From Scyliorhinus canicula (lineage: Eukaryota): DNA of 64,000 nt. Below are positions 10,301-13,300 of this stretch, in pieces; the stretch's first letter is position 1; each line of letters begins with the position of its first letter. The DNA is taken from the NCBI RefSeq assembly GCF_902713615.1, contig NC_052168.1, positions 11,470,001 to 11,534,000 of the forward strand, read 5' to 3'. The position numbers and the translations under genes are program-made. The notes below the pieces were generated by a model. The model was not told the origin of the DNA. It did no database searches and saw only the letters and a program-made list of their open reading frames with translations.

Positions 10301-13300
10301 TTAACTGCTGTCCTCCAGCGAGAGCTTGTCAAACAGGTACTCTCCCATCCCATTCTCAGGAGTTCCCAGCCGCTTCAGGTTGGTGATGTAGTCGCCCAGT
10401 CGCTTGATGACCTTGACCTGCTCATCCAAATAGTGAGTCTCCAGAAAGTCACACAGCTGGGAGAGAAAGAAATAGAGAGACAGTCAAAAATAGGAAGTTG
10501 GGTGCCAACAGCATCAGTTTGAGGTCAGGAAAGATGCTCGATTTCATGTCCCAAATGTTAGGATCCCAGAAACTAAAATTGCAAAACTGAGCAAGAATAC
10601 TTAGAAGATGCCTATTGGTCATGTTAAACGCAGTCAATTGGCCCCAAACAGATCCTCTTTTTACATATCTTATGACCATATTAATCTTCATTCTAACCCT
10701 TCTATGTATTTACATGTGTACCTGTGTTGCCATATTATGCATTCTTTATTTACTAAAATGATCTGTTTTGAGCTGCTTGCAGAAAAAACACTTGTCACTG
10801 TACCTCATTACATGCAACAATAAACAAATCCATCCATCCAACCCAAAGACCACTAGTTCCGGTTTACTGGCTTCCTGTGCAGACAACCCTTTCTGGAGCT
10901 CTGTCTGGTCAGACTATTGCAAATGGCACAGATCTGGCTCCCACCCCTTACTTCTCAGTTTCCTCCAACTAAGATGTCTTGTGACAAACCACCATCCCTC
11001 AAAATTATCCACATCCAAGGGATTCTCCAGAATCAAACATGTTCCATTAGCCATCTATTGGTAAACAATAATGATATAAAACATAGAACAGTACAGCACA
11101 GAACAGGCCCTCGATGTTGTGCCGAGCAATGATCACCCTACTCAAACCCACGTATCCACCCTATACCCGTAACCCAACAACCCCCCCCCCCCGCCACCTT
11201 ACTTTTTTTAGGACACTATGGGCAATTTAGGATGGCCAATCCACCTAACCCGCACATCTTTGGACTGTGGGAGGAAACCGGAGCAAACCCACGCACACAC
11301 GGTGAGGACGTGCAGACTCCGCACAGACAGTGACCCAGCCGGGAACTGAACCTGGGACCCTGGAGCTGTGAAGCATTTATGCTAACCACCATGCTACCCA
11401 AAATGAACCCTTATCACAGCTTTTAGCAGACATACTGCCTGTAGGTCTTTAAAAAATTACTGCAATGTAACAATTTCTACAGTCATCACACAAAGCACCT
11501 CGCAACCAATCACATACTGGATAGACAATGGAGCAGTAATGTGCACAGCAAGCCCTCACTCCCAGGTAACAATGTGATAAATGACAATATGATGAATGAC
11601 AGATTGTTGGTGAAGAATTAGATATTGACCAGGACAACGAGGGCAACAGTGGAGAAAGGGCAATGTTGAAATTTACTTTCTGGTTTTATCTACATTTTAA
11701 AAATATATATTGTTTCACTTCACATCCAGGCTCATAGCAAATGTGGAGGGTCTCCAATTGGTTGATCCTGTCAAAGGCAATGAAACAATACAAGTCTACC
11801 AGTGATCAGAATGATCATGTGAAGCTTACATGAGGATCAGTCTGGGTGGTGGCGAGTTGGTGAAGATCCAGCAAACTCTGGTTCACATTCTTCTCCAGAT
11901 CCAGGGCAACCTGCATTGCCTGGAGACTGTTGCCCCACTCATCCTTCTCTGGTTTCTGCAATGGAGAAAGACAGGTCAGTTATTTCAGGGTGCGGTAATT
12001 ACATAGTTTTCACCCTCATGTCAACATTTTCCTTGCTTTGTGCAGGGTTACAGGACTGATGTACAAAAGGTGTTTGGAGTTGGGCCTCCAGACAGCTCAG
12101 TCCTCCCACCCAGGAATTGAATGTCTCAACTATGTCAGGGAGAAGACCAGACACCAGAGGTCAATGAACATTTCCCCTCTGGTAATGAACCCCATCCCCA
12201 CAATTCAAACCTTCACATCCTGCAAGAGGATACGGCCTCCACGTCGATTCTGGAATTTCATCAGCTTCTCCGCATGTTCCCGCTTCTCCTGGGACTGATG
12301 TTTGAAGAACTGGGAGAAATTGTGGAGGGCGACATCGTCCCGGTCAAAGAAAGACGTCTGGAAGAACAAGGCAAAAATCCATGAATACACCACTGACCCC
12401 AATTCTAGTCCTCTTCCAGCCCTCTCCTCAAACTGACTATTCCATATGAAGTTACATTCCTTTGGTATATTGAACCAGTTCATAACACAACATCCTTGGT
12501 TTCCAGTTGGGAAGTTTAGCCAGACAGGGGATCAATGAACCATCCAATGCCAGCAGAATAGTGCAGGTTTGGTAAGCGAGTGAAGGCTCCCATTTCAGCA
12601 CAAAATTCAAACTTGTAGATACTAAACCAATGCAGATAGATGGCAGATGGAGTTTAGTCCGAACAAATGTGAGGTAATGCATTTTGGAAGGTCTAATGCA
12701 GGTAGGGAATATACAGTAAATGGTAGAACCCTCAAGAGTATTGACAGTCAGAGAGATCTAGGTGTAGAGCTCCACAGGTCACTGAAAGGGGTAACACAGG
12801 TGGAGAAGGTAGTCAAGAAGGCATATGGCATGCTTGCCTTCATTGGCCTGGGCATTGAGTATAAAAATTGGCAAGTCATGTTGCAGCTGTATAGAACCTT
12901 AGAGAGGCCATGCTTGGGAGTATAATGTTTGATTTTGGTCACCACACTACCAGAAGGATGTGGAGGCTGTAGAGGCTGCAGGAGATTTACCAGGGTCATA
13001 TAATTCAGTGCATAAGGAGGCCATTCAGCCCATCAAGTCTGCACCAGCTCTTGGAAAGAGCACCCTACCCAAGCCCACACCTCCACCCTATCCCCATAAC
13101 CCAGTAATCCCACTCAACACCAAGGGCAATTTTGGACACGAAGGGCAATTTATCATGGCCAATCCACCTAACCTGCACATTTTTGGACTGCGGGAGGAAA
13201 CCGGAGCACCCGGAGGAAACCCACGCACACACGGGGAGGATGTGCAGACTCCGCACAGACAGTGACCCAAGCCGGAATCGAACCTGGGACCCTGGAGCTG

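What the first reader, a model, noticed from the sequence alone, without database searches (positions are those of the whole stretch)
12211..12357. Neither H nor L: nucleation carboxylates are also missing, and other positions are L-like
Seen: positions 57 and 60 are His and Gln/Arg (KHQSQEK), not the acidic residues of the L/M cavity nucleation patch; only Glu61 and Glu64 remain. The four-fold channel His173 is Leu (DKLSL) and exon 1 ends YLSL, both as in mammalian L chains. Tyr29 is Thr, and the usual QVRQN is QVSQN or QVCQN. Inference: these subunits lack both standard iron-handling specialisations, so they may be a distinct class or resemble an intermediate between M and L.
Basis: partly seen in the sequence, partly recalled or inferred. 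Interest (0 to 1): 0.7.

Follow-up and report, generated by a model that had tools for sequence, protein, structure and literature searches.

The report
Shark ferritin subunit without iron-oxidising site
This stretch is one exon of five intact, transcribed, tandem shark ferritin genes. A lysine replaces a key iron-binding glutamate in their iron-oxidising site, so they look like a shark-made counterpart of the mammalian light chain, but they keep the heavy-chain type of iron-binding patch inside the shell.

Summary
12211-12357 (minus strand) is exon 2 of a 4-exon, 176-aa ferritin gene, one of five intact tandem copies in the window. In human-H numbering all five have His57, Gln60 (Arg in one), Glu61, Lys62, Glu64, Thr29 and Leu173.

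- **A distinct class: yes.** The genes belong to a strongly supported shark-only clade (100/100) found in carcharhiniform, orectolobiform, lamniform and hexanchiform sharks. The copies are under purifying selection (dN/dS 0.10-0.26), and spliced transcripts of the family are abundant in one RNA run.
- **An M-to-L intermediate: not supported.** The clade sits beside the catalytic shark and chimaera ferritins, while mammalian L nests among tetrapod M-type genes. Lys62 needs four independent origins on the tree. An AU test could not reject a shark-plus-L clade (p 0.19).
- **Nucleation residues missing: overstated.** His57, Leu173 and Cys9 also occur in ordinary catalytic shark ferritins. His57/Gln58/Glu61/Glu64/Glu67, the heavy-chain and mitochondrial-ferritin type of inner patch, is intact.

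Most likely this is a non-catalytic subunit that co-assembles with catalytic ones. That is inferred, not shown.

The scan had already noted the continuation of this array on adjacent DNA (s1-228651) with the same reading.

The parts
12211..12357 (-). Gene A exon 2 (the finding): helix B with H57 Q58 Q60 E61 K62 E64 H65 E67
   Evidence: spliced joints 11955/12211 and 12357/13975
13975..14076 (-). Gene A exon 1 (start codon, E27, T29, Y34, ends YLSL)
11830..11955 (-). Gene A exon 3 (helix C, E107; clade signatures Q98, V102, D105, Q119, Q124)
10301..10456 (-). Gene A exon 4 with stop codon (D131, E134, E140, Q141, L173)
14151..14157 (-). Gene A TATA box (TATAAAT), invariant in all five copies, first T 81 nt 5' of the A of the ATG
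14250..14300 (-). Gene A inverted CCAAT boxes (GATTGG motifs) of the conserved proximal promoter
22981..27100 (-). Gene B (exons 27100-26999, 24608-24462, 24182-24057, 23136-22981); K62 and also H65L
31206..34883 (-). Gene C (exons 34883-34782, 33048-32902, 32599-32474, 31361-31206); K62
42010..46455 (-). Gene D (exons 46455-46354, 44388-44242, 43988-43863, 42165-42010); K62
54316..56866 (-). Gene E (exons 56866-56765, 55589-55443, 55139-55014, 54471-54316); K62, Arg60

Best explanation
The stretch is exon 2 of one of five intact, tandem, transcribed ferritin genes. They belong to a shark-specific subfamily, here called 'K62 type'. The subfamily derives from the same chondrichthyan lineage as the catalytic shark ferritin arrays. 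In the whole subfamily the glutamate that bridges the two irons of the ferroxidase centre (Glu62) is a lysine, as in tetrapod L chains. I infer that the lysine occupies and neutralises the di-iron site, probably paired with Glu107 or Glu27 as in L chains, so the subunit cannot oxidise Fe2+ quickly. Everything else needed to take up and hold iron is kept. That includes the three-fold channel Asp131/Glu134, Glu140, and the heavy-chain or mitochondrial-ferritin type of inner-surface patch His57/Gln58/Glu61/Glu64/Glu67. The subunit therefore most likely works as a non-catalytic, shell-building and mineral-holding partner. It would co-assemble with catalytic shark subunits (canonical H or the array genes), making it a functional analogue of the L chain that arose independently. 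Expression runs from a TATA/CCAAT promoter with a short leader and no iron-responsive element. Shown: gene structure, residues, clade, purifying selection, transcription and splicing, fold. Inferred: loss of ferroxidase activity, the Lys62 salt bridge, and co-assembly.
For: Five intact 531-nt coding sequences with GT-AG introns; pairwise dN/dS 0.10-0.26. Spliced joints lie exactly at the modelled exon borders at k-mer depth 1,780-4,880, with introns near zero apart from two interspersed-repeat stretches (11058-11489, 12642-13650) that are deep in every run; the joint 10456/11830 is also seen in raw oligo-dT RNA reads. The AlphaFold model of the 90%-identical Mustelus orthologue has pLDDT 86.9 and five helices, with TM 0.91-0.93 and rmsd about 1 A to frog M and human H ferritin. 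Lys62 is in 14 of 14 clade members; E27, Y34, E61, E64, E67, E107, D131, E134 and E140 are kept in all 14. The clade has 100/100 support with Heptranchias basal, inside a chondrichthyan clade (96/86) together with catalytic shark and chimaera ferritins; this is unchanged without columns 57-65. After Lys62 the other ligands drift. His65 was lost at least four times in the clade: Leu in gene B; Arg in Heptranchias and Cetorhinus; Cys in a second Heptranchias gene; Tyr in Carcharodon. Glu61 became Ala or Gly in two members and Gln141 became Glu in four. Among the E62-bearing rows of the tree only two lack His65. E62K together with H65G is the standard ferroxidase-null human H mutant (PMC4029007). 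His57/Glu61/Glu64 is the nucleation site of mitochondrial ferritin, and Gln58/His57/Glu61/Glu64 form the Fe3-Fe5 sites of human H (PMC13411386). No IRE was found; the TATA and CCAAT promoter is conserved.
Against: No biochemical data exist for any member. The effect of E62K alone, with His65 kept, has not been measured in the papers I could read. E27, Y34, E61, E107 and mostly Q141 and H65 remain conserved. That could mean residual metal binding or slow catalysis rather than a dead site. Co-assembly could not be tested because complex prediction was unreachable. The abundant transcript in run X1 differs from gene A at a few bases, so expression is shown for the family, not for gene A itself. 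The tissue is unknown because run labels are coded. Only mammalian L chains were available for the tree.
Confidence: 0.6

Rival explanations
1. The subunit is attenuated, not dead. With Glu27, His65, Glu61, Glu107 and Gln141 still present, it binds one iron or oxidises slowly. It would then work as a self-sufficient homopolymer, as mitochondrial ferritin does, using His57/Glu61/Glu64 for nucleation.
For: Six of seven ferroxidase residues are kept in four of the five window genes and in most clade members. The mitochondrial-ferritin type nucleation triad is intact. The copy number is high, and family transcripts are very abundant in one run.
Against: Glu62 bridges both irons. Lys62 is the L-chain state and part of the ferroxidase-null human mutant. 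His65, Glu61 and Gln141 are repeatedly lost inside the clade, as expected if the site no longer works.
Confidence: 0.17
2. These genes are the shark orthologues of the tetrapod L chain, or a surviving M-to-L intermediate. On this view Lys62 was inherited from a common ancestor.
For: Lys62, Leu37 and Leu173 are shared with mammalian L, and Gln141Glu appears in orectolobiform members. The AU test does not reject shark K62 plus mammalian L as one clade (p 0.19).
Against: The free tree puts the clade with catalytic chondrichthyan ferritins (96/86) and puts L inside tetrapod M-type genes that have Glu62 (96/92). A single origin of Lys62 would need several reversions; the tree needs four changes. 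Identity to L is 56-59%, against 71-75% to H and M. Leu173 is common in catalytic shark ferritins. The basal Heptranchias member still has Tyr29 and His60. L-chain marks at positions 27 and 65 and Glu57/Glu60 are absent. The neighbour is identified only to family level.
Confidence: 0.08
3. The subfamily has moved to a role other than iron storage, such as binding a new partner on the outer surface, secretion, or an egg or immune function. The ferritin shell would serve mainly as a scaffold.
For: Five of the eight clade-signature positions lie on helix C: 98, 102, 105, 119 and 124. From general knowledge of ferritin structure this helix faces outward, but I did not check that on a 24-mer here. 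The IRE is lost, the promoter is of TATA/CCAAT type, and copy number is high.
Against: The channel and inner-surface iron ligands D131, E134, E140, E61, E64 and E67 are invariant in the clade, which points to continued iron handling. No signal peptide or added domain is present; the protein is 176 aa like frog M.
Confidence: 0.1
4. The copies are decaying duplicates of catalytic shark ferritin genes on their way to becoming pseudogenes.
For: One catalytic ligand is lost in all copies and a second in gene B. They sit in a tandem array where redundancy is high.
Against: All five reading frames and all splice sites are intact. dN/dS is 0.10-0.26. The clade is shared by four shark orders, including Hexanchiformes. 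Spliced transcripts are abundant.
Confidence: 0.03

Closest known systems
Bullfrog M (H') ferritin and the tetrapod/fish M-type lineage
   Same: Same length (176 aa) and the same four-exon layout. It is the best solved-structure match for exon 2 and exon 4, with 71-72% identity and model rmsd about 1 A. The C-terminus is of the same style ([10 protein letters not shown]...SS).
   Different: M ferritin has Glu62 and a working ferroxidase centre, Glu57, Tyr29 and His173. The shark genes have Lys62, His57, Thr29 and Leu173. In the tree they fall in a separate chondrichthyan clade, and the order of the three main clades is unresolved.
Mammalian ferritin L chain
   Same: Lys62 in place of the bridging glutamate; Leu37 and Leu173; a likely role as a non-catalytic partner subunit; Glu61, Glu64 and Glu67 kept.
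   Different: L chains also have Gly65, His or Tyr27, Glu141 and Glu57. L uses Glu60/Glu61/Glu64 for nucleation (PMC13411386). The shark genes keep Glu27, His65 (4 of 5) and Gln141, and have His57 and Gln60. Identity is only 56-59% and the free tree gives them a separate origin.
Human H-chain mutant '222' (E62K + H65G), the standard ferroxidase-null control
   Same: It carries the same E62K replacement on an otherwise H-type background (PMC4029007).
   Different: The laboratory mutant also removes His65. Four of the five window genes keep it, while gene B (H65L) resembles the double mutant.
Human mitochondrial ferritin inner-surface nucleation site
   Same: His57, Glu61 and Glu64, which hold the nascent ferric-oxo cluster in that protein (PMC13411386), are all present in the five window proteins.
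   Different: Mitochondrial ferritin has an intact ferroxidase centre that feeds the site; the shark subunit does not.
Atypical IRE-less invertebrate ferritins (for example sponge HdF2)
   Same: Ferroxidase-ligand replacements that include E62K, and no IRE (PMC8395497).
   Different: Those proteins are far more diverged, with several ligand and channel replacements and under 49% identity to human H. The shark genes change one ligand and keep the channel.
Koala 'ferritin heavy chain A-like' (P0132)
   Same: A 176-aa M-lineage gene with Lys62 and Leu173, which is another independent E62K.
   Different: It lies in the tetrapod M clade on a long branch, is a single gene, and its function and expression are unknown.

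Membership tests
Eukaryotic 24-mer ferritin (Pfam PF00210) | Sequence match to the ferritin profile and to solved ferritins | tested here: met
   All four exons of gene A hit PF00210. Exons 2 and 4 hit over 200 solved ferritin sequences at E down to about 1e-20 to 1e-22.
Eukaryotic 24-mer ferritin (Pfam PF00210) | Four-helix bundle plus short fifth helix | tested here: met
   Model of orthologue P0172 (90% identical): helices 11-39, 46-72, 93-120, 124-154, 161-170, pLDDT 86.9; TM 0.91-0.93 to frog M and human H.
Eukaryotic 24-mer ferritin (Pfam PF00210) | Three-fold channel carboxylates Asp131 and Glu134 | tested here: met
   Invariant in the window genes and the whole clade.
Eukaryotic 24-mer ferritin (Pfam PF00210) | Assembly into a 24-subunit shell | not testable with these tools
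   No coordinates or oligomer model were available; complex prediction was unreachable.
Catalytic H/M-type subunit | Complete ferroxidase centre: Glu27, Tyr34, Glu61, Glu62, His65, Glu107, Gln141 | tested here: not met
   Lys62 in all five genes; gene B also has Leu65.
M-type subunit | Glu57 on the cavity face together with an intact ferroxidase centre | tested here: not met
   His57 and Lys62. Glu57 is present in all 22 sister catalytic shark-array rows.
L-type subunit | Lys62 in place of Glu62 | tested here: met
L-type subunit | Other L marks: no His65, no Glu27, Glu141, and cavity Glu57/Glu60 | tested here: not met
   Glu27, His65 (4 of 5), Gln141, His57, Gln or Arg60.
L-type subunit | Common descent with tetrapod L chains | tested here: inconclusive
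   The free tree separates them; four origins of Lys62 are needed; AU p 0.19 does not reject a joint clade; only mammalian L rows were available.
IRE-regulated vertebrate ferritin | Iron-responsive element in the 5' leader | tested here: not met
   No Rfam hit in the window nor within 2.5 kb upstream of gene A at E up to 10. No C-bulge/CAGUGN hairpin with a fully paired upper stem on either strand.

The most novel reading that the evidence does not exclude
Sharks evolved their own light-chain analogue. This is a non-catalytic ferritin subunit made by the same Glu62-to-Lys change as the tetrapod L chain, but arising independently from a chondrichthyan M-like gene at least as early as the common ancestor of living sharks. 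It was then amplified to eight or more IRE-less copies. If so, the split between an oxidising subunit and a storing subunit arose at least twice in vertebrates, and E62K is the preferred route: four origins on the present tree.
Probability: 0.45. Interest if true: 0.62.

Novelty: new variant of a known kind. Interest (0 to 1): 0.45.

Why it matters
Textbook accounts give non-catalytic L chains to tetrapods and only catalytic H and M chains to fishes. A conserved, expressed, amplified shark subfamily with the L-chain lysine on an otherwise H/M-type background would be a natural replicate of L-chain evolution. It isolates the effect of E62K from the many other L-chain changes. It shows which residues drift once the centre is disabled (His65, Glu61, Gln141) and which do not (Glu27, Tyr34, Glu107, channel and cavity carboxylates). 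It also offers a test of whether the His57/Glu61/Glu64 patch can nucleate mineral in a subunit that does not oxidise iron. The specific point of this finding, the missing Glu57 and Glu60, turns out to be the ordinary H-chain state and is of minor interest on its own.

Tried and rejected
1. **Complex prediction** of a K62 subunit (P0164) with the canonical H of a congeneric shark (P0191) was asked for eight times. The machine was unreachable each time, so there is no result in either direction.

2. **A spliced 5' non-coding exon.** An RNA contig leaves gene A at 14077, just after an AG, with 47 unlike letters. The leader is absent from the window. All five genes share a TATA/CCAAT promoter directly upstream. 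I therefore read that contig as a paralogue outside the window with a divergent short leader.

3. **Non-mammalian L chains for the tree.** The third and last homologue search returned only mammalian L. One of them, P0391, is an engineered horse L with Glu-to-Gln changes at the nucleation site and must be left out of residue counts.

4. **A batoid member of the clade.** The sawfish candidate P0252 (His65Arg, C-terminus LSLEEN) falls in the catalytic array clade. Absence from rays and chimaeras is not shown, because the searches were capped.

5. **Timing relative to the chimaera split.** The free tree places the clade outside Callorhinchus plus the shark array, but the alternative is not rejected (AU p 0.167).

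6. **Literature.** Five full-text searches found no paper describing this shark subfamily.

8. **The look-up of encoding contigs** for the Carcharodon orthologue returned no DNA.

9. **TMEM150B identity of the neighbour.** Only the Frag1/DRAM/TMEM150 family could be shown.
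Full report
**What is there**

The interval 12211-12357 read on the minus strand is an open 49-codon exon flanked by AG and GT. A tblastn search of this peptide against the window finds five copies at 88-100% identity, all on the minus strand, 8-12 kb apart. Motif scans and splice-site inspection give five complete gene models, A to E. Each has four exons of 102, 147, 126 and 156 nt, GT-AG introns and a 176-residue product. All four exons of gene A hit Pfam Ferritin. Exons 2 and 4 hit solved ferritins at E about 1e-20 to 1e-22, with bullfrog M ferritin (also 176 aa) first.

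The alignments to the 183-residue human H chain fix the numbering: human-H (Met-less) number = shark residue + 3.

**The observation**

With that numbering, KHQSQEK is K56 H57 Q58 S59 Q60 E61 K62, followed by R63 E64 H65 A66 E67.
- All five genes have His57, Glu61, Lys62, Glu64 and Glu67.
- Position 60 is Gln in four genes and Arg in gene E.
- His65 is Leu in gene B.
- Thr29, Leu37 (exon 1 ends YLSL) and Leu173 (DKLSL) are in all five.
- Position 9 is Ser in A, B and C, and Cys in D and E.

It left out that Glu67 and Gln58 are also retained.

**Are the genes alive?**

All frames and splice sites are intact. Pairwise dS is 0.06-0.17 and dN/dS is 0.10-0.26.

Public reads and contigs were laid on gene A.
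- Run X1 covers the four exons at k-mer depth of thousands. Introns are near zero apart from two interspersed-repeat stretches, which are deep in every run.
- X1 carries joints exactly at 10456/11830, 11955/12211 and 12357/13975. The first joint is also seen in three raw oligo-dT RNA reads of X24.
- The X1 contigs differ from gene A at a few bases, for example 12245, which gives Gln75 as in genes B, C and E. Transcription and splicing are therefore shown for the family, not strictly for gene A.
- Run X16 covers exon and intron alike at about 3x and is DNA.

An AlphaFold model of the 90%-identical Mustelus orthologue has the five ferritin helices (pLDDT 86.9). It superposes on frog M and human H ferritin at TM 0.91-0.93 and about 1 A rmsd.

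**Relatives**

A search of protein representatives with exon 2, followed by homologue searches, recovered the same kind of protein in other sharks. It is 176 aa, has QS(Q/H/E)EK in helix B, and ends in LSLE. The species are:
- Mustelus asterias (90% identical to gene A);
- Stegostoma, Chiloscyllium and Hemiscyllium;
- Cetorhinus and Carcharodon;
- the sevengill shark Heptranchias (87% identical).

NCBI names them 'ferritin, middle subunit-like' or 'heavy subunit-like'. In Heptranchias two such genes lie in tandem.

A maximum-likelihood tree of 86 vertebrate ferritins gives three main clades.
- **An H clade (99/89).** It includes canonical shark H.
- **An osteichthyan M clade (97/78).** Mammalian L nests in it with squamate and tetrapod M-type genes (96/92).
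- **A chondrichthyan clade (96/86).** It consists of the K62 sharks (100/100, Heptranchias basal) and their sister, which is Callorhinchus plus the catalytic shark array genes (99/93).

Removing columns 57-65 changes nothing (100/99 and 98/81). The state 'Lys62' needs four changes on the tree: the shark clade, one Heptranchias array gene, a koala M-lineage gene and mammalian L.

The AU test does not reject a joint clade of shark K62 and mammalian L (p 0.19). It also does not reject a later origin of the K62 clade inside elasmobranchs (p 0.167). Convergence is therefore the best-supported reading but is not proven. The lack of non-mammalian L sequences is a real gap. A sawfish candidate falls in the catalytic clade, so I found no ray or chimaera member, but the search was not exhaustive.

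**Which residues are really special**

The residue table shows the following.
- **His57 is the H-chain state.** It is found in 7 of 7 tetrapod H rows and 2 of 7 catalytically intact shark H rows. The sister catalytic shark array has Glu57 in 22 of 22 rows.
- **Leu173, Cys9 and Gln60** occur in 14, 13 and 1 of the 22 catalytic shark-array rows. Leu173 also occurs in cnidarian ferritins.
- **Clade-specific positions** are Lys62, Thr29 (Tyr in Heptranchias), Leu33, Gln98, Val102, Asp105, Gln119, Gln124 and Glu176. Leu37 is added in galeomorph sharks.
- **Invariant in the clade** are Glu27, Tyr34, Glu61, Glu64, Glu67, Glu107, Asp131, Glu134 and Glu140.
- **Drifting in the clade:**
  - His65 became Leu, Arg (twice), Cys or Tyr.
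  - Glu61 became Ala or Gly in two members.
  - Gln141 became Glu in four orectolobiform members.
- Among the E62-bearing rows of the tree only two lack His65.

Repeated loss of other ligands after Lys62 is what one expects if the centre no longer catalyses.

**Mechanism**

Glu62 bridges the two irons. E62K with H65G is the standard ferroxidase-null human H chain (PMC4029007). That Lys62 pairs with Glu107 in L chains is my recollection of the L-chain structures and was not checked here.

On the cavity side, recent crystallography assigns His57/Glu61/Glu64 to the nascent ferric-oxo cluster of human mitochondrial ferritin. [quoted passage not shown] The shark subunits keep all of the H-type and mitochondrial-type ligands and lack only the L-specific Glu60 and Glu57.

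'Neither H nor L' is therefore fair for the catalytic centre. 'Nucleation carboxylates are missing' is not: the patch is H-like, not empty.

The most likely role is a non-catalytic subunit that builds shells with catalytic partners and receives Fe3+ from them. That role, and the loss of activity itself, are inferred. Complex prediction could not be reached in eight attempts.

**Regulation and surroundings**

- No IRE is found by Rfam in the window or near gene A at a permissive threshold. A direct scan for the C-bulge/CAGUGN hairpin also finds none.
- The 350 nt upstream of the five start codons share an invariant TATA box and several inverted CCAAT boxes. A poorly conserved leader of roughly 45-95 nt follows.
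- Poly(A) signals lie 70-135 nt after the stop codons.
- At 2-151 on the plus strand lies the last exon of a Frag1/DRAM/TMEM150-family gene (Pfam E 1.9e-5; atlas first hit a DRAM2-like fragment).

**Comparison and novelty**

- The proteins work most like an L chain but are not L chains. Four L marks are not met and the free tree separates them.
- They look most like M ferritin in length, exon layout, C-terminus and 71-72% identity, but they fail the M definition, which needs a working centre and Glu57.
- Five full-text searches found no description of this subfamily.
- The scan itself had already reported the continuation of the same array just beyond this window, with the same reading (s1-228651).

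I class it as a new variant of a known kind. The specific angle of this finding, the cavity residues, is largely explained as the ordinary H-type state. The interest lies in the subfamily as an apparently independent L-chain analogue.

Noticed in passing
window 2-151 (+): Last coding exon (50 codons, then a stop) of a Frag1/DRAM/TMEM150-family membrane protein gene, tail-to-tail with ferritin gene A. Pfam matches profile positions 195-220 of 220 at E 1.9e-5. The atlas first hit is a DRAM2-like fragment. Whether this gene is TMEM150B could not be decided.
   Followed up: partly
window 14077-14426, 27101-27450, 34884-35233, 46456-46805, 56867-57216 (-): All five genes share a conserved proximal promoter with an invariant GTATAAAT box and three or four inverted CCAAT boxes (GATTGG). 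The stretch between the predicted start site and the ATG is the least conserved part and is full of indels.
   Followed up: yes
window 11058-11489 and 12642-13650: Intronic interspersed repeats of gene A with enormous depth on both strands in every run, DNA and RNA alike. Loose ends such as GAATCGAACC suggest a tRNA-derived SINE family.
   Followed up: no
window 14077: An abundant RNA contig of run X1 matches exon 1 of gene A up to the base before the ATG, then continues with 47 letters that are absent from the window. It is probably a paralogue outside the window with its own short leader.
   Followed up: partly
window 22981-27100 (gene B): Gene B is the most diverged copy (dN/dS about 0.23-0.25). 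It carries His65Leu, Arg43Gln in the FDRDD motif, Leu69Met, Gly149Ala and Glu162Ala, so it has lost two ferroxidase ligands, like the human E62K/H65G mutant.
   Followed up: partly
L001 1496-5931 and 10001-11756: Heptranchias perlo has two tandem K62-type genes, with helix B reading HEKRER and HAKREC (His65 lost in both, Glu61Ala in one). Both keep Tyr29 and His60. An Arf-family GTPase gene lies downstream on the same strand.
   Followed up: partly
protein P0132 (koala) and P0202 (Heptranchias array gene): Lys62 also occurs in a koala M-lineage ferritin and in one otherwise catalytic-type Heptranchias array gene. Together with mammalian L and the shark clade this makes four origins of E62K on the tree.
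   Followed up: partly
protein P0391: The 'horse ferritin light chain' returned by the homologue search is an engineered PDB variant with Glu-to-Gln changes at the nucleation site (RQLAQQKRQG). It should not be used as a natural L chain in residue counts.
   Followed up: yes
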